Shown: positions 49 to 61,543 of the stretch, one piece after another
Position numbering within the stretch: the first letter of the stretch is position 1
Layout of the letters: every line of letters begins with the position of its first letter
Assembly: GCF_001194135.2 (NCBI RefSeq)
Contig: NC_068990.1
Location: 20,983,792 to 21,047,791 of the forward strand
DNA length: 64,000 nucleotides
Origin: Octopus bimaculoides
Lineage: Eukaryota
Direction: 5' to 3'
Made by a program: the position numbers and the translations under genes
Notes under the pieces: model-generated
Seen by the model: only the letters and a program-made list of their open reading frames with translations
Database searches by the model: none
What the model was told of the DNA's origin: nothing

Positions 49-1070
49 TCATATATTCTGTAAGTCTGTTTTGTGTCTTGTATCCGTGTTGTACGCGTAG
101 CCGTCTACCTATGAGAGATTGAAAGATTGAAAGAAAATGATAGAAAATGATAAACAGAAACCTATCCATTATCCAGTCTCCAGAATTAACGCACTTCAGG
201 AGGGCTGTATTTAGTCCCTCACTTTCCGTGTTAACTTGAGTACGATGTAGAAGCTGTTATCGATATTTTACATAGCCAGAGGTTAGTTAACATTTTTAAT
301 AACGCGTTTTAGAAACTTTCTTCATACAATGTGATGAAAACTGAATGATAAAGTGTCATTAAACAATTCTGAGTTGTCAAGTAAACAAAGAATGCGAAAT
401 CAAATTCATTCCAATACCTACATCTGGGAATATTTTTCCACCCACTAATTACTTATTTATATTTAGTCTTGTCTCAGCCTGTCTGTTCGTATATACGTAT
501 AAATGTATTTCGCTCCTGTTCTCGCTCTCTGTCTCTCAGTATGGAAGTGTGTATGCGCGTGTTTTATATGTCAGCTACGCACGCATATAACAGGCAAGGT
601 GCATCTTATAGAGAGAAATTATCACTAAAAGCGTCTTGCAGTTAATTCCAAATCAGTTAGAAACTGCGGTCAACGTCTGAATGTAATAAACGAATATGAA
701 AATGGAAATTTGAATTTACCCATTAACCTTTTGCTTATCCAAAGCATTTTCATAAGTTTGTCCAAAATGTCAGTGCTTGTTTTCAACCTCTTAGTTGGCC
801 ATGTTTCATTCGTTCTGAGTAATCTACAACTTTCATTTCATAAGCTTTAAGTATTCGGGTGGGTGGAAAAGCATTGGGAATGTATACCATATATGATGAA
901 TGGTCACCAGGGAAATATGTCATACTAGTGTCATATGTCATACAAATGTCGTTGTGTTGACTAAGAATTTACTGATGTATACTATAGCACAGTATATATA
1001 CATTAGCAACAAACATTGTCAGTGCTCTATTAATTTATTAAACTAGCTACCATGATTGCAATATATTTAT

Positions 1071-1112
1071 ACAGTCTGACGAAAGGTAACAGACCGAAAC
1101 TTCGAAGTTACT
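1071..1112 (+). ncRNA. Type I hammerhead ribozyme motif (host copy), interrupted by a SINE insertion; the rest of the helix I 3' strand resumes at 1538-1539
   Basis: ACAGT-CTGACGA-AA-GGT(aacag)ACC-GAA-ACT(tcga)AGT-T-ACT. Removing the insert at the TSD restores ACTGT, giving a 5-bp helix I (ACAGT/ACTGT). Core CUGANGA, GAAA and NUH are all present. Confidence 0.75.
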
Positions 1113-1192
1113 ACAGTTCTATATTTAAGAGATGAGGAATTCTGTACATTATTTACATTTGACGGATATTTGTCCTCATCTTGTTTGTTGTT

Positions 1193-1238
1193 AACACAAC
1201 GTTTCGGCTGATATACCCTGCAGCCTTCATCAGGTGTC
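1193..1238 (-). ncRNA. Minimal type I hammerhead ribozyme motif in the inverted SINE arm
   Basis: Minus strand reads GACAC-CTGATGA-A-GGCTG(cagggtatat)CAGCC-GAA-ACGT-T-GTGTT: helix I 5 bp, helix II 5 bp, palindromic ACGT helix III, GUU triplet. Confidence 0.8.
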
Positions 1239-1323
1239 TTGGGGATAAGGTGTAGTGGTTAAGAGCGCGGGCTACTAACCCCAAGATTCCGAGTTTGATT
1301 CCAGGTCAGTGACNNNNNNNNNN

Positions 1324-1377
<54 letters not shown>

Positions 1378-1426
1378 TCGAAAAATACCTTAGGAATGAG
1401 AACCCAGTTTCGAAATTTCTCCAAAT

Positions 1427-1470
1427 CACCTGATGAAGGCTGGAGGGTATATCAGCCGAAACGTTGTGTT
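1427..1470 (+). ncRNA. Minimal type I hammerhead ribozyme motif in the direct SINE arm (helix I weakened)
   Basis: CAC-CTGATGA-A-GGCTG(gagggtatat)CAGCC-GAA-ACGT-T-GTG. Only 3 clean helix I pairs, because the upstream sequence reads AATCAC rather than AGACAC. Confidence 0.7.
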
Positions 1471-1673
1471 AACAACAAACGAGATGAGGACAAATATCCG
1501 TCAAATGTAAATAATGTAAATAATATTCGAAGTTACTGTCACCCTCATTCTAGTGAAAGTTTAATAAACATGTGTTGGACAAAAAATATTGAGTAATCCT
1601 TCCGTTTTATGTTAAATTGTTTTGTATCTAACCTGTCATAAGAAGCAAACATTAATATAATATATTTGTGTAT

Positions 1674-40603: not shown

Positions 40604-42167
40604 GCCTTTGCACAGCTTCTAACGCTGGCGAGGTACTAAAGTCTCAGATGTTCACTACCAGCAGTGAACTAAGGTAACACCTTCCAGAGTATTCGAACGG
40701 TTCCAAGCAATGCTGTTTTCTTGCAAATGCTTCACCCTTATTTCAGCCCCTATTTGTTCCACGTACTTATCGAGATTTTTACTTACTATTCCCAGGACTC
40801 CGACAATTGTTGGTACTACTGCTACCTTTTTCATCGACCACAACTGCTTAACTTCCCAAACTAACCTGTCATATCTCTCAACCTTTCTTTCTTCCTTATC
40901 GCAAACTTTGTTGTCAGCTGGGCATGCTATATCTAAGATCCAGCATAGTTTATTTTCTTTCTCAATTAAGACTTATGTCTGTTTTCCAATTCTCTGTCTC
41001 TTGGTCACACTGAATCATAAAATCCAATAGGATCTTTGCATTTCTATTTTCAATGATGCCTTCAGGAGTGTGGTCGTACCAATTGTTTGCTCTGTCAAGT
41101 CCATACTTGTTGCAAAGTGTCCAATGGACAAGCCTGGCTATATTGTCGTGGCGTCTCTTATATTCCTTTTGGGGTAGTGGCGTACATCGGCTGATAATAT
41201 GCCATACGGTTTCACCGTTTTGTCCACAGATTTTGCACTTATCACTTTCTCCTGTGTTGTCTATTCTGTATTTTATGTAATTTGTTCTTAGTGCTTGCTC
41301 TTGAGCAGTACAGATTAAAGCCTCCGTTTCCGGTTTTAAATCACTTTTAGTCATCCACAGCCATCTTTTTACTCTGCCTGTCTTATCTTCAACATCCCTA
41401 TGAAATTGACCATGCATTCTTATCTTTACCCACCTATTTTCAGTTTCATTCGTTTTCAATTTCTTGTACAGTGCTTTATCTTTGCAATCTTTCATCCTAT
41501 ACAAGCCTGACCTTCTTACTTCTAATAATAGCGGCTCTGTGAAATTGTTTTACATACCATGCTATGTTGTTTTATTCTGCTCTAATACTGTGTTCGCATC
41601 CAATAAGTCATCTTTCCTCTCTTTTTCATGGTACATACAGTCTGTGTCACTTTTTGGGTGGAGTGACCCATATCTAGTTAGCAACTTCCTTGTCTTTCTG
41701 TCTAAGCTGTGTAGTTCGTCTACTGTCCATGCGAGTACCCTTGCTCCATATCTAAGGAGTAAAACCGCCCAGGCGTTGATAGCTTCGATCTTATTCTGTC
41801 CATTTAATTTCGACTTTGGGATCAGTCTCAGTCTGCGCAAGTACTCCACCTTAACTTTTATCCATTTCCAAAATCCCCAAGTACTTATAACCCGTCTCTA
41901 CTATCTGCTTCATAACCTCCAACGACAGTATAGTTAGCCCGTCCATACATTTGATTTTGCCTCTCTTCAAGACTAGCACACCACGCTTTCTCATTTCGAA
42001 CTCCATTCTGATATCAACGAGGGTACTGACCTGGGCTTCATCTTTACCATAAAGTTTGAGGTCATCCATGAACACATACGGCTTTTGAATACATACCCAG
42101 CTTTTGCTTTCCACAGAATCAGTGTTAGTGGTATCAAGCACAGTACAAAGATCAGTGGGGACAGGCA
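40604..42167 (-). mobile_element. R4/Dong-like non-LTR retrotransposon, 5'-truncated (RT core to RLE), decayed
   Basis: GDCLSPLIFVL, FMDDLKLYGK, YKYLGILE, ETEALICTAQEQALRTN, CKICGQNGETVWHIISRC, RRHDNIARLVHW and VPTIVGVLG. Confidence 0.92.
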
Positions 42168-47035: not shown

Positions 47036-47097
<62 letters not shown>

Positions 47098-47109
47098 TGA
47101 TGATGATAA

Positions 47110-48240
47110 GGCGGCGAGCTGGCAGAAACGTTAGCACGCTGGGCTAGATGTTAACCGGTATTTCGTCCGTCTTTACGTTCTGAGTTCAAATTCCGCCGAA
47201 GTCGACTTTGCCTTTCATGCTTTCGGAGTCGATAAATTAAACGCCAGTTACGTACTGGGGTAGATCAAATCAACTGCCCCCCCCCCAACCACCAAATTTC
47301 ATGCCTTGCGCCTAGAGAAGAAAAGAATAATAATAATAACATATATATATTATTTTCATTCGCAGATATGCATGCGTGTATGCATGTATGTTTTCTTTAC
47401 ATGACTATCATAGTTTTCCTACCTTAACAAGCTAATCATCTTACACATCTTTTTCATTCTTCATTCATTTTCTATAATTTATAATTCCAAGTAGCATTGC
47501 TTAATCATTATCCATTGAACACACATCAGAGTAGATTTGTATTATTTGATGCTCTTTCTATCGTTGTGCATTTATGGACTCACACCTTTGCAAATTCTTT
47601 CATATGGTATTGTTATTATCGAGAGCTAGAAGAGGCGGCGATTTGGCAGAATAATTATGTTACCAGACTAAATGCTTAGTAACGTTTCGTCCACCTTTAC
47701 GTTCTAGGTCCAAATTCTTATTTCTTTAGTGCCCACAAGGGGCTACACACAGAGGGGACAAACAAGGACAGACAAACGGATTACGTCGATTATATCGACC
47801 CCAGAGTGTAACTGGTGCTTATTTAATCGACCCCGAAAGGATGAAAGGCAAAGTCGACCTCAGCGGAATTTGAACTCAGAACGTAGCGGCAGACGAAATA
47901 CAGCTAAACATTTTTCCGGGCGTGCTAACGTTTCTGCCAGCTCACCGCCAAATTCTGTCAAGGTCGACTTTGCCTCTCAGCCTTTCAGGGTCGATAAATT
48001 AAGTACCAGTCAAGAATTGTGGTCGTTGTAATGAACTTCTCCTTCCCCTCAACAACTGTTGGTGCTGTGCCAAAATTTGAAACCCTTATCGAGAATTAGA
48101 AGAGGTAGTGTGTTGTCAGATTGTTACTGCACCGGACCAAATGCTTAGTAACGTTTCTTCTGGATTTTTACTTTCTGAGTACAAAGTCTGTCTAGGTTTT
48201 TCGTTTTTCTACAGTCAATAATATAAGTATTAATCAATCG
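47110..48240. mobile_element. Cluster of SINE family 1 copies (+ 47110-47327, + 47630-47720, - 47722-47948, + 47950-48085, + decayed 48100-48240)
   Basis: Family motifs repeated on both strands. Confidence 0.75.
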
Positions 48241-51669: not shown

Positions 51670-51730
<61 letters not shown>

Positions 51731-51747
51731 AATAATAATAATAATAA

Positions 51748-51961
51748 GGCCAACTGGCAGAATCGTTAGCACGCCGAGCAAAACGCTTAGCGGAATTTCG
51801 CCCGTCGATACGTCCTGAGTTCAAATTCTGCAGAGGTCGACTTCGCCTTTCATCTTTTCGGGAACGATAAATTCAGTACCAGTTGCGTACTGAGGTCGAT
51901 GTAATCGACTTAATCCACCACCCTACCAAATTTGAGTCCTTGAGTTTCCAGTAGAAAGGAT
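51748..51961 (+). mobile_element. SINE family 1 copy following (ATT)n(AAT)n
   Basis: CTGGCAGAATCGTTAGCACGCCG...GAGTTCAAATTC...GAGGTCGATGTAATCGAC...CAGTAGAAAGG. Confidence 0.85.
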
Positions 51962-59667: not shown

Positions 59668-61543
59668 TTCTTCTTCTTCTTCTTCTTCTTCTTCTTCTTC
59701 TTCTTCTTCTTCTTCTTCTTCTTCTTCTTCTTCTTCTTCTTCTTCTTTCAATTTTTGTTTCCAAAAAACTCATTACTTGTATTGGTAGGCTATCAGAATA
59801 AACACACCACATTGTTCATTTACAATAATAAGGTAGATAAAGAAGGGAGATCAAACAAACAAAAAAGTAAAGAAGGAAAAGCAAAGAGAATGGAAAAAAG
59901 AAAACAAAGAAAAAAATGGGGAAAAGAAAATAATTCACAGCGACAATGCTCTTCTCAATGCATGTGACGTACCAGTTAAGACAATCTTTTACACTTCCTG
60001 CATGGATGGTAAACCAGGTATCATTCTCCAATAATCTTCAGTTCCTTTTCTGATCATTCCAAGTCCTCCTATAATCAATGGTATTGTAACCGTCTGGAGA
60101 TGCCACATTTTCCCAATTTCAATCAGCATAGTTTTATATTTTCTGAGCTTATCAGATTCTTTTGCCGAGATATTGTCATCACAATCTTTGCTCATGTCAA
60201 TCAATAAACAGATTGTATTGTTTTGGTCTTTCACAATAATATCTGGTTTACTAGCTTTGATTGTTCGATCTGCACATACTGGAAACTCCAAAAAACATCG
60301 TTTGATTTTTTCTTTCTTGTACGATTTTTCAGCAGTTTTGATTTTATGACGCCGACATATTATCCAGTGTAAATACTGGCCAAATCATGTCTTGATGTAT
60401 ATTCTACAGGTGCTAAACCTTACACCCAGAGATTAGGTGATTCACTGTTTCAATATCATCGTTATAGTATCGGCACTTTGGATCTACTCTGGTTTTCTTC
60501 ACATTGGCTTGATAGTTCCGGGTCCTTTAGCCCTGAGCTCCGTAGCCACTAATGGTTGTGCTTCTGGTCTACATTAGGTTGTTTGCTACGGGTGATATAT
60601 TTGTCATGCAGACGCCCTATCATCCAATTGTTCAAACGCATTTTGCTTTGCTCTTTATTTCACCTTCTTTGCAACTACAATTGCCGCACTTCAGTCATGC
60701 TGTTCATCCTGGGTATTGTGCATAAACTCACTTGAATCTTGTTTTTATTCCCCTTCATAAAAAAAGTAAAGCTTCTTACGACTTTTATGGTTTTCAACGA
60801 GCTTTAGTATCCAGTCGTTAGATGTTTCAAGATATTTGGCCAGTCCAATTCTGGTGGCTTTGTAAGTGATTTCAAATTGGAGCGAGCTTCGACCTTCTTG
60901 GACTGTGGGAAGGTAAAGAGGATCTGCGTCTGCCTTTGTATGGTGCATCTTATTGCCAGCCAGCCGCCTATAGATTTTCCTGTCAATCTTCCTTATTTCA
61001 CTGATATTCAAGTGCAACATATTGAAACTGTAAATAACAACCGGAGCTGCTAAGGAATGTATGGCTAACACTTTCCTACGGGCATTAAACTCAAATTTAA
61101 GGACTGCTCGAACTCTCCTGTAACATTCCTTCCTGATCTTCTCTTTCATGCTTGCATGCTGAATGCCAGAGCCCTCATTTATTCCGAGATATTTGTAAGT
61201 TTGTTCCTGCTCGAGTTCTTTTATGACTGTGCCAACATCTAGCACCACTGAATGTGAGATCTCCAATTTCCCTTTCTGGAAATTCGCCTTGGTACATTTT
61301 TTATCAAGACTAAATTCCATCCCGGTGTCATCACTGAATGCTTTCATAATATGTAACAGACCTTCAAGCTCATTATCGTCTTTGCCATGGTGCTTTAAGT
61401 CAACCATCCGAAATAGATGGTTTATTTTTCTTGTCGTCAATTTTATACCCATACCCTGTTCTGATAAGTTCAATTGTAAGTGGTATTAGAGTTATGCAAG
61501 AAATCAGAGGTGAAAGTGAGTCACCTTTGAAACTGCCACAGTA
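59668..61543 (-). mobile_element. R4/Dong-like element, 5'-truncated (RT core to RLE), with a (GAA)n tail
   Basis: FKGDSLSPLI, KINHLF, YKYLGINE, DRTIKASKPDIIV, LLIDMS and TVTIPLIIGGLG. Tail (TTC)n on the plus strand at 59668-59748; 5' end abuts (AAT)n at 61545-61605. Confidence 0.92.

What the first reader, a model, noticed from the sequence alone, without database searches (positions are those of the whole stretch)
1101..1537. Ribozyme-tailed tRNA-SINE with an inverted arm, inserted across the cleavage site of another hammerhead
Seen in sequence: a perfect 12-bp direct repeat TTCGAAGTTACT (1101-1112 and 1526-1537) brackets a 413-bp insert. The insert comprises an inverted copy of the element's 3' part (1113-1245), a tRNA-like head with A/B boxes, (TAA)n, and the direct 3' part. 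Both arms carry the motif CTGATGA-A-GGCTG..CAGCC-GAA-ACGT-T. The duplicated 12 bp are the helix III palindrome, cleavage triplet and start of helix I of a different hammerhead. Established: minimal type I hammerheads with a palindromic helix III and 5'-inverted terminal copies are hallmarks of Penelope-like elements, while SINEs are normally mobilised by LINEs. Inference: this is a Pol III SINE mobilised by a Penelope-like element, using a ribozyme-defined end, and it may prefer other ribozyme loci as targets.
Basis: partly seen in the sequence, partly recalled or inferred. Interest (0 to 1): 0.9.

Follow-up and report, generated by a model that had tools for sequence, protein, structure and literature searches.

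The report
Hammerhead-tailed SINE inserted Penelope-style
A short mobile element carries a promoter head like those of tRNA-derived SINEs and a tail with a minimal hammerhead ribozyme, and its insertion scars match those left by Penelope-like retrotransposons rather than LINEs, but it is one copy of a broadly known kind.

Summary
A perfect 12-bp duplication (1101-1112 / 1526-1537) brackets an insert made of an inverted partial copy (1113-1240), a head with Pol III A/B boxes (1241-1313), a 10-N gap, (TAA)n and a direct 3' part (1378-1525). Both arms carry a minimal hammerhead. Joining the flanks rebuilds a third, different one.

New here: the inverted arm runs 26-32 nt further than the direct arm. 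That extra "tail" completes a 9-10-bp stem with the arm interior. The two arm ends lie 53-59 and 85 nt after the ribozyme cut site.

This is the published signature of Penelope-like elements (PLEs). The same ribozyme in metagenome PLEs (RT plus GIY-YIG ORFs) sits 83 nt from their 3' ends.

So PLE-type mobilisation is well supported. The ends are not ribozyme-defined, because the cut site lies uncleaved inside both arms. That head and tail form one SINE is inferred across the gap. No second copy and no partner PLE could be obtained. Preference for ribozyme targets rests on one case.

Verdict: a new member of a known kind (hammerhead-bearing non-autonomous PLE partners). Moderate interest.

The parts
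1071..1112 (+). Target (flank) minimal hammerhead, left part. Helix I 5' strand ACAGT 1071-1075; core CTGACGA 1076-1082; bulge AA; helix II GGT/ACC 1085-1095; GAAA 1096-1099; palindrome ACTTCGAAGT 1099-1108; position 17 = T1109; RNA cut site 1109|1110.
   Evidence: Descriptor hit. No hits in 300 shuffles. Sequence read.
1101..1112 (.). Left copy of the 12-bp target-site duplication TTCGAAGTTACT.
   Evidence: D7, 100% identical.
1113..1144 (-). Tail: 32 nt present only on the inverted arm. In RNA sense it reads CAGAATTCCTCATCTCTTAAATATAGAACTGT. Its TCCTCATCTC pairs with GAGATGAGGA in the arm interior.
   Evidence: Alignment A1; fold; direct repeat D15.
1145..1240 (-). Inverted 5'-truncated copy of the element's 3' part, including a complete minimal hammerhead (1193-1238 on the minus strand). 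The inner boundary is uncertain, between 1236 and 1245.
   Evidence: (I1).
1241..1313 (+). SINE-type head. A-box-like AGGTGTAGTGG at 1248-1258 and B-box-like AGTTTGATTCC at 1292-1302, spaced 44 nt. Cut off by the gap.
   Evidence: 12 box pairs in the window against 3.0 in shuffles. Alignment with other SINE heads in the window. No tRNA call.
1314..1323 (.). Assembly gap (10 N, true length unknown) between the head and (TAA)n.
1324..1377 (+). (TAA)n microsatellite, about 18 units. It is either internal to the element or its junction with a nested element.
1378..1426 (+). Unique body segment upstream of the ribozyme, present only in the direct copy.
1427..1468 (+). Minimal hammerhead of the direct copy. 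CAC / CTGATGA 1430-1436 / A / GGCTG-loop-CAGCC / GAAA / CG / T / T17 / cut 1465|1466 / GTG.
   Evidence: Helix I register and covariation with 13 external sequences.
1469..1518 (+). Post-ribozyme segment of the direct arm. It holds the 5' half of the stem (GAGATGAGGA, 1481-1490) and most of its loop. Clear homology with the inverted arm ends at 1518, 53 nt after the cut.
1519..1525 (+). AATAATA at the end of the direct arm. It is either a short terminal reiteration of AAATAAT or weakly aligned tail sequence (4 of 7 bases match).
   Evidence: A comparable 9-nt terminal duplication occurs in PLE locus L007.
1526..1537 (.). Right copy of the target-site duplication.
   Evidence: D7.
1535..1539 (+). 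ACTGT, the helix I 3' strand of the target hammerhead. It is completed only when the flanks are rejoined.
   Evidence: empty-site reconstruction: 5 bp against 3 bp.

Best explanation
This is a single retrotransposition product of a short non-autonomous element. The element has a SINE-type head with Pol III A/B boxes, a (TAA)n stretch, a short body, and a 3' module made of a Penelope-type minimal hammerhead followed by a stem-loop.

Proposed mechanism:
1. A master copy is transcribed from the internal boxes through the whole element (inferred).
2. A Penelope-like RT/GIY-YIG protein supplied in trans binds the 3' module (inferred by analogy with the anole PLE).
3. The endonuclease nicks both target strands 12 bp apart.
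4. Each 3'-OH primes reverse transcription at an internal site of the RNA.
   - On the bottom strand, priming is inside the stem-loop, 53-59 nt after the ribozyme cut site. This gives the full-length direct copy back to the head.
   - On the top strand, priming is 85 nt after the cut site. This gives a cDNA that stopped after about 128 nt and became the inverted arm with its extra tail.
5. Joining the two cDNAs and filling in produced the 12-bp duplication.

The structure is shown in the sequence; the steps are inferred. The hammerhead is part of the recognised 3' module. It does not define either end of the insert. The target was a pre-existing, unrelated minimal hammerhead sequence.
For: **Structure in the window**
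- 12-bp duplication abutting both arm ends.
- Arms 97.8% identical over 92 nt, in inverted orientation.
- The inverted arm carries 26-32 extra nt that complete a 9-10-bp stem with the arm interior. It therefore cannot have been copied from the direct arm of this locus. It must come from a template that extends further 3'.

**Published PLE hallmarks**
- An inverted 5'-truncated copy plus a 30-40-bp tail at one end only (PMC8557442).
- The anole PLE protein cuts and extends both strands and starts reverse transcription at two internal sites in a stem-loop, 85-92 nt after the hammerhead cut. The tail is the sequence between those sites, and cleavage is dispensable (PMC11167929).

**Ribozyme traits of PLE minimal hammerheads** (PMC4209133), all present
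- An extra nucleotide after position 9.
- A G10.1-C11.1 pair.
- A 5-bp helix II.
- A palindromic ACGU helix III.

**The same ribozyme elsewhere**
- The same core and helix II occur in 21 metagenome loci.
- L002 and L012 encode RVT_1 and/or GIY-YIG next to it. The L002 ORF is homologous to insect PLE proteins.
- Helix I covaries in the register that the window's arms use: covariation score 0.306 against 0.09 in shuffles, 0 of 500 shuffles reaching it.
- Terminal copies of that PLE family end 83 nt after the cut.

**Head**
- A/B boxes spaced 44 nt, with the A box 7 nt from the junction, as for a transcript starting at 1241.
- It aligns with other SINE heads in the window.
- There is no TTTT on the sense strand (weak evidence).
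- No duplication flanks head..(TAA)n on its own.
- Both the head family and the tail family are singletons among about 28 SINE loci in the window. This argues against a chance nested insertion.
Against: - Only one copy exists.
- Head and tail are joined only across a gap of unknown length.
- The head is not recognised as tRNA-like by ARAGORN or Rfam.
- No Rfam hammerhead model matches the ribozymes. Rfam's gathering thresholds also give no hit at the metagenome loci, PLE-linked ones included.
- Helix I of the direct copy is only 3 bp, and ribozyme activity is untested.
- The locus has no tandem (pseudo-LTR) arrangement.
- The assignment of the window to an octopus, where PLEs are reported as recently active, rests on my recollection of its common SINE. 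No tool result confirms it.
Confidence: 0.55

Rival explanations
1. Nested elements. The two arms are an ordinary heavily 5'-truncated inverted-plus-direct insertion of a headless Penelope-like element, either an autonomous PLE terminus or a retrozyme-like non-autonomous one. The head plus (TAA)n is a separate LINE-dependent tRNA-SINE, for example one with a (TAA)n tail, that later landed between them. PLE-type insertion would still be true. Only the 'SINE' part would be wrong.
For: - The gap (1314-1323) hides the sequence between the head and (TAA)n.
- (TAA)n arrays are common in the window and abut other SINE copies.
- Dong-R4 LINEs are reported as very active in octopus. That they are (TAA)n-associated is from my memory.
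- PLE insertions are typically strongly 5'-truncated.
Against: - The nested SINE would have had to land exactly at the junction of the two arms. No direct-copy sequence lies left of the head.
- It shows no target duplication of its own, and there is no (TAA)n on its left side.
- It would belong to a family with no other copy in a window holding about 28 SINE loci, dominated by two families.
Confidence: 0.2
2. A LINE-dependent SINE. The stem-loop plus short 3' reiteration (AAATAATGT AAATAATA) is a stringent LINE-type 3' tail. The hammerhead-like motif is incidental. The inverted arm arose by twin priming or by a second independent insertion.
For: - Stringent LINE 3' ends also combine a stem-loop with short tandem repeats (established knowledge).
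- LINE RT fragments are present in the window.
- No PLE ORF is present in the window.
Against: - Twin priming inverts an upstream part of the same RNA. Here the inverted arm duplicates the 3' end and extends further 3' than the direct copy, which requires internal priming on a template that continues downstream.
- The extra 32 nt pair with the arm interior, so they belong to the element and are not transduced flank.
- The motif meets every minimal-hammerhead criterion and occurs nowhere by chance.
- The same ribozyme lies 83 nt from the ends of RT+GIY-YIG elements.
- Two independent insertions would not share a single 12-bp duplication.
Confidence: 0.08
3. A DNA transposon or foldback (MITE-like) element with roughly 110-nt terminal inverted repeats and a 12-bp target duplication.
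For: Inverted repeats near both ends, flanked by a direct duplication.
Against: - The outermost termini do not match: 32 nt on the left against 7 nt on the right. Transposase-bound termini are normally the best-conserved part.
- A 12-bp duplication is unusual for known superfamilies (established knowledge).
- The arms carry a retroelement-type ribozyme module.
Confidence: 0.03
4. An assembly artefact. The inverted arm, or the join across the gap, is a mis-assembly of separate SINE copies.
For: - This is a gap-rich short-read-style assembly, with 19 gaps in 64 kb.
- PLE inverted structures are known to trouble shotgun assemblies.
Against: - Both junctions of the inverted arm lie inside one contig (1-1313).
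- The arm differs from the direct arm at two positions and carries a unique tail.
- The flanks on the two contigs share the duplication and together rebuild one hammerhead.
Confidence: 0.05

Closest known systems
Penelope-like elements (Penelope/Poseidon-type, RT plus C-terminal GIY-YIG) and their insertion products
   Same: - Minimal type I hammerhead with a bulged nucleotide after position 9, a G10.1-C11.1 pair, a long helix II and a palindromic helix III.
- An inverted 5'-truncated copy next to the full copy.
- A one-sided tail of about 30 nt.
- Priming on both DNA strands at internal RNA sites about 85 nt after the ribozyme cut, in a stem-loop.
- A target duplication of non-fixed length.
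   Different: - No ORF.
- No tandem or pseudo-LTR arrangement at this locus.
- A 5' end formed by a Pol III-type head.
- The partner PLE is not identified.
SMalpha / Sjalpha of schistosomes (SINE-like retroposons with a type I hammerhead; Ferbeyre 1998, cited in PMC8490949 and PMC6155905)
   Same: A short non-autonomous, SINE-like element that carries a hammerhead. From memory, it also has Pol III boxes.
   Different: - SMalpha has a full, fast-cleaving hammerhead with loop-loop contacts. Here the ribozyme is the minimal PLE type, predicted to need dimers or protein.
- A different phylum.
- No sequence similarity was tested, because SMalpha was not available to the tools.
Animal non-LTR retrozymes (Cervera & de la Pena 2020; bioRxiv 10.64898/2026.07.22.740005)
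   Same: Non-coding, hammerhead-bearing elements proposed to borrow PLE machinery. Dispersed monomers exist.
   Different: - Retrozymes are tandem repeats processed into circular RNAs by cleavage at each unit.
- Here there is one head-to-tail unit plus an inverted fragment, the ribozyme site is uncleaved, and a Pol III head is present.
LINE-dependent tRNA-derived SINEs (for example the two abundant families in this window)
   Same: Head with A/B boxes at tRNA-like spacing, overall length of about 300 nt, and a flanking duplication.
   Different: - The 3' module is a PLE-type ribozyme plus stem-loop, not a LINE tail or an A-rich tail.
- An inverted 3'-end duplicate with a tail is not a LINE/SINE feature.

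Membership tests
PLE-type minimal hammerhead (Cervera & de la Pena 2014) | Conserved core CUGANGA ... GAA, an A15.1-U16.1 pair, and a non-G base at position 17. | tested here: met
   Both arms have CUGAUGA..GAAACGU-U. The flank has CUGACGA..GAAAC..GU-U.
PLE-type minimal hammerhead (Cervera & de la Pena 2014) | [quoted passage not shown] | tested here: met
   The arms have bulge A and GGCUG/CAGCC, 5 bp (6 bp in the direct arm). The flank motif is weaker: 2-nt bulge and a 3-bp helix II.
PLE-type minimal hammerhead (Cervera & de la Pena 2014) | Helix III reduced to a palindrome, so that only dimers can form it. | tested here: met
   ACGU in the arms. ACUUCGAAGU in the flank, where a co-fold forms a 12-bp intermolecular helix.
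PLE-type minimal hammerhead (Cervera & de la Pena 2014) | Helix I complementarity in the correct register, with covariation between families. | tested here: met
   Counted on 15 sequences. The three core-proximal pairs form in 11-13 of 15, with 3-4 pair types. Covariation score 0.306 against 0.09 in shuffles (0 of 500 reach it), and 0.05-0.11 when slid. The direct arm has only 3 bp.
PLE-type minimal hammerhead (Cervera & de la Pena 2014) | Located in an element that encodes RT plus GIY-YIG. | tested here: inconclusive
   Met for the same motif in metagenome loci L002 and L012. There is no PLE ORF in the window, and the host genome was not searchable.
PLE-type minimal hammerhead (Cervera & de la Pena 2014) | Self-cleavage, as a dimer or with protein assistance. 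| not testable with these tools
   Needs in vitro transcription of dimeric constructs.
Rfam hammerhead families | A match to a curated covariance model. | tested here: not met
   No hit at gathering score or at E<=10. The 20 metagenome loci scanned, L002 and L012 among them, also give no hit at gathering score. These models do not appear to cover minimal hammerheads that lack a helix III.
Penelope-like insertion product | An inverted 5'-truncated copy abutting the 5' end of the main copy. | tested here: met
   1113-1240 against 1423-1518.
Penelope-like insertion product | A 30-40-bp tail present at one end only, reflecting two internal RT start sites. | tested here: met
   26-32 nt are present only on the inverted arm. 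The ends lie 53-59 and 85 nt after the cut. This compares with 83 nt in PLE loci L003, L007 and L008 and 85-92 nt in the anole PLE.
Penelope-like insertion product | A partial tandem (pseudo-LTR) arrangement. | tested here: not met
   No direct tandem copy at or near the locus.
Penelope-like insertion product | An autonomous partner that shares the 3' module. | not testable with these tools
   The host genome is not in any searchable collection.
tRNA-derived SINE | Internal Pol III A and B boxes at tRNA-like spacing. | tested here: met
   1248 and 1292, spaced 44 nt, with 2 mismatches each. There are 12 such pairs in the window against 3.0 in shuffles, most of them at other SINEs.
tRNA-derived SINE | Recognisable tRNA homology or cloverleaf. 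| tested here: not met
   ARAGORN and the Rfam tRNA model give no hit, even on 82 nt at E<=10. The 3' part of the head may lie in the gap.
tRNA-derived SINE | Many dispersed copies with one collinear structure. | tested here: inconclusive
   It is a singleton in 64 kb. The genome is not searchable, and head-tail continuity crosses a gap.
Animal non-LTR retrozyme | Tandem units, each with a type I hammerhead, processed to circular RNA. | tested here: not met
   One direct unit plus an inverted fragment, with the ribozyme site retained uncleaved in both.
L1-type twin priming | The inverted segment derives from RNA upstream of the direct segment, and nothing lies 3' of the direct copy's start. 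| tested here: not met
   The inverted arm duplicates the 3' end and extends 26-32 nt beyond it.

The most novel reading that the evidence does not exclude
A family of Pol III-transcribed SINEs has swapped the usual LINE-derived tail for a Penelope-like 3' module (minimal hammerhead plus stem-loop). It is mobilised by PLE RT/GIY-YIG. In addition, this machinery homes preferentially into DNA that itself encodes minimal hammerheads, that is, other PLE-derived sequences. That would explain how PLE tandems and clusters of ribozyme loci grow.
Probability: 0.15. Interest if true: 0.7.

Novelty: new member of a known kind. Interest (0 to 1): 0.5.

Why it matters
SINEs are defined by their dependence on LINEs. 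A SINE-type head fused to a Penelope-like 3' module would extend the SINE concept to the third class of retroelements.

It would also give a small natural template of about 300 nt for studying PLE retrotransposition. The locus itself is an unusually clean natural record of the PLE mechanism proposed from in vitro work:
- priming on both strands at two internal sites;
- a one-sided tail;
- a ribozyme that is not used for end formation.

If the family is abundant in a cephalopod genome, part of the many "unclassified SINE" families reported there may be PLE-dependent.

Tried and rejected
- **Other copies in the window.** BLAST of head, body, arm and flank against the window found nothing but (TAA)n arrays.
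- **Copies elsewhere through translated ORFs.** The element's open frame had no homologue among 5.8 billion proteins. Twenty exact ORF look-ups around the locus and across the window were absent from the collection.
- **Exact 23-mer of the element.** Absent from the metagenome, prokaryote-genome and viral collections.
- **Generic ribozyme pattern.** Absent from prokaryote genomes. Present in 21 metagenome loci, which I used as outgroup PLEs.
- **Reaching the host genome through LINE RT homologues.** The hits come from other organisms: 66-76% nucleotide identity and none of the window's SINEs.
- **PLE ORF in the window.** tblastn with the metagenome PLE ORFs found none.
- **Rfam and ARAGORN.** No match to the ribozymes or the head. 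Rfam (at gathering score) and ARAGORN also found nothing at the metagenome loci.
- **Thermodynamic folding of whole arms.** z-scores are not significant. Only the 9-10-bp stem is notable.
- **Weak matches judged to be chance.** The flank at 950-961 and 1003-1014 against the arm (D10 and D11), and TTCGAA inside the element.
- **Absence of TTTT on the sense strand.** Weak evidence only, because 19-24% of random windows of the same length also lack it.
- **Literature.** I found no paper describing a tRNA-headed SINE with a PLE tail, or hammerheads in cephalopod repeats. Two papers (Lunse 2017, Ferbeyre 1998) were not held.
Full report
**Observation**

- A perfect 12-bp direct repeat, TTCGAAGTTACT, lies at 1101-1112 and 1526-1537 (D7).
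- Between the copies lie, in order:
  - an inverted arm, 1113-1245;
  - a head with A/B-box-like motifs, 1241-1313;
  - ten N, 1314-1323;
  - (TAA)n, 1324-1377;
  - a direct 3' part, 1378-1525.
- The arms pair over 107 nt at 93%. The core of 92 nt is 97.8% identical.

A perfect 12-mer repeat somewhere in this 1.6-kb region is not rare in itself: about 10% of shuffles contain one. Here, though, the right copy starts at the base after the right arm ends, and the left copy abuts the left arm.

**The gap**

The 10-N gap separates only the head from (TAA)n. The flank/arm, arm/head and arm/flank junctions all lie inside contigs. Nothing here is coding, so frame does not matter.

Three things support the view that both sides belong to one insertion:
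- the duplication;
- the matching arms;
- the two flanks, which sit on different contigs, rebuild one hammerhead when joined, and its helix I grows from 3 to 5 bp.

How many bases are missing is unknown. I could obtain no independent assembly.

**The ribozymes**

I wrote a descriptor for minimal hammerheads. It requires:
- CUGANGA;
- a bulge of 0-2 nt;
- a helix II starting G...C;
- GAAA;
- a palindromic helix III;
- a non-G base at position 17;
- a helix I of at least 3 bp.

It hits three places in 64 kb on both strands: the two arms and the flank motif. It hits nothing in 300 dinucleotide-preserving shuffles. The descriptor was tuned after I had seen the motifs, so the estimate is somewhat generous. 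A zero in 300 shuffles is still clear.

The arm ribozyme shows each trait listed for PLE minimal hammerheads (PMC4209133):
- a G10.1-C11.1 pair;
- a 5-bp helix II;
- a palindromic ACGU in place of helix III, which implies action as a dimer.

Rfam finds no hammerhead here. At gathering score it also finds none at the metagenome loci described next, L002 and L012 included. The negative result therefore says little.

**The same ribozyme in real PLEs**

The pattern CTGATGAAGGCTG-N6-16-CAGCCGAAACGT occurs in 21 metagenome contigs.
- In L002 an ORF on the same strand carries RVT_1 and GIY-YIG.
- In L012 a GIY-YIG ORF ends about 105 nt before the ribozyme, and the next open stretch follows it, which is the PLE tandem layout.
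- The L002 ORF is homologous to insect PLE proteins.

Across 13 distinct external sequences plus the two arms, helix I covaries in the register that the arms use. The covariation score is 0.306 against 0.09 in shuffles, with 0 of 500 shuffles reaching it. Slid registers give 0.05-0.11.

In the L003/L007/L008 family, terminal copies end 83 nt after the ribozyme cut, next to (TA)n. L007 has a 9-nt terminal duplication.

Aligned in RNA sense, the two arms are the same from CACCTGATGA to AATAATGTA. The direct arm then has AATAATA before the duplication. The inverted arm continues with CAGAATTCCTCATCTCTTAAATATAGAACTGT.

This extra stretch contains TCCTCATCTC, the complement of GAGATGAGGA inside the arm. 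Together they form a 9-10-bp stem that appears in both the minimum-energy and the centroid structures.

Two conclusions follow:
- The extra 26-32 nt belong to the element, not to its flank.
- The inverted arm cannot have been copied from the direct arm of this locus.

Measured from the ribozyme cut (1465|1466), the direct copy ends 53-59 nt downstream, inside the loop. The inverted copy ends 85 nt downstream, just past the stem.

**Comparison with known PLE behaviour**

- PLE insertions often carry an inverted 5'-truncated copy and a 30-40-bp tail at one end only (PMC8557442).
- In vitro, the anole PLE protein cuts and extends both DNA strands. It starts reverse transcription at two internal sites in a stem-loop, 85-92 nt after the hammerhead cut. 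The tail is the sequence between them.
- In the same system ribozyme cleavage is not needed, and uncleaved RNA is the substrate (PMC11167929).

The locus matches this point for point: priming on both strands, two start sites about 30 nt apart, the same distance from the ribozyme, and an uncleaved ribozyme site inside both arms.

LINE twin priming does not fit. It inverts an upstream part of the RNA and leaves nothing 3' of the direct copy's start.

**What is not supported**

The claim of a ribozyme-defined end fails. Neither end coincides with the cut site. Cleavage would detach the head and body from the priming region.

**Is it a SINE?**

For:
- The head has A- and B-box-like motifs spaced 44 nt. 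The A box lies 7 nt from the junction, as expected for a transcript that starts at 1241.
- Such box pairs occur 12 times in the window against 3.0 in shuffles, mostly at other SINEs. The head aligns with those other heads.
- The sense strand has no TTTT. This is weak evidence, since 19-24% of random windows of the same length also lack it.

Against:
- There is no tRNA fold.
- The head meets the tail only across the gap.
- The window holds no second copy.

The main rival is a headless PLE fragment pair with a separate SINE nested between the arms. That rival needs an insertion exactly at the arm junction, with no duplication of its own, by a family that has no other copy among about 28 SINE loci in the window. 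I rate it at about 0.2, against 0.55 for a single SINE-like element.

**The target**

The duplicated 12 bp do cover the helix III 3' half, position 17 and the start of helix I of the flank hammerhead. The flank motif is the only other descriptor hit in the window. A uniform insertion would therefore land there about once in 1000 tries.

This is one post-hoc case. PLE endonucleases are reported to recognise PLE sequence, so homing into PLE-derived DNA is plausible. It is not shown here.

**Context and novelty**

I believe the window is from an octopus, because I recall its commonest SINE. No tool confirmed this. In *Octopus vulgaris*, 30 Penelope families and 893 unclassified SINE families are reported as recently active (PMC13282606).

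Already known:
- hammerhead-bearing non-autonomous partners of PLEs (retrozymes; PMC7229834; bioRxiv 10.64898/2026.07.22.740005);
- the SINE-like SMalpha of schistosomes.

I found no paper that describes a tRNA-type head on a PLE 3' module, or hammerheads in cephalopod repeats.

**Verdict**

- PLE-type mobilisation is well supported, at about 0.8.
- The single-SINE reading is probable, at about 0.55 overall.
- The ribozyme-defined-end claim is rejected.
- Target preference remains open.
- It is a new member of a known kind, of moderate interest.

Noticed in passing
window 47038-47094 with 47113-47265 (+); 51672-51728 with 51748-51916 (-): (TAA)n arrays abut the 5' ends of two copies of the window's commonest SINE family (13 loci). 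This suggests a partner that targets (TAA)n microsatellites.
   Followed up: partly
window 1034-1044 and 1558-1568: A perfect 11-bp inverted repeat brackets the flank hammerhead once the insert is removed. It forms a closing stem in the predicted fold of the empty site.
   Followed up: partly
L007 (about 83-92 nt after the ribozyme cut); window 1510-1525: A bona fide PLE copy ends with a 9-nt terminal duplication (TTTTGAATA twice). This resembles AAATAATGT/AAATAATA at the end of the window's direct arm. It may reflect re-initiation or slippage at the RT start.
   Followed up: partly
L004, L005, L009, L017 (ribozyme position 17): Several metagenome minimal hammerheads have G at position 17, or a helix I shifted by one base. 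Canonical rules would make them non-cleavable.
   Followed up: no
window 40962-41504 (-) and 60745-61473 (-): LINE reverse-transcriptase fragments. The closest protein (71% identity) comes from a short contig of an ENA metagenome sample (ERZ22666216). Other relatives lie on megabase contigs of unrelated ENA assemblies.
   Followed up: partly
window 1409-1414 and 1526-1531: The palindrome TTCGAA occurs inside the element body and also begins the target duplication. Probably chance.
   Followed up: no
window, whole: There are 19 assembly gaps in 64 kb, many next to (TA)n or (TC)n runs. About 28 SINE loci from two dominant families are present.
   Followed up: partly
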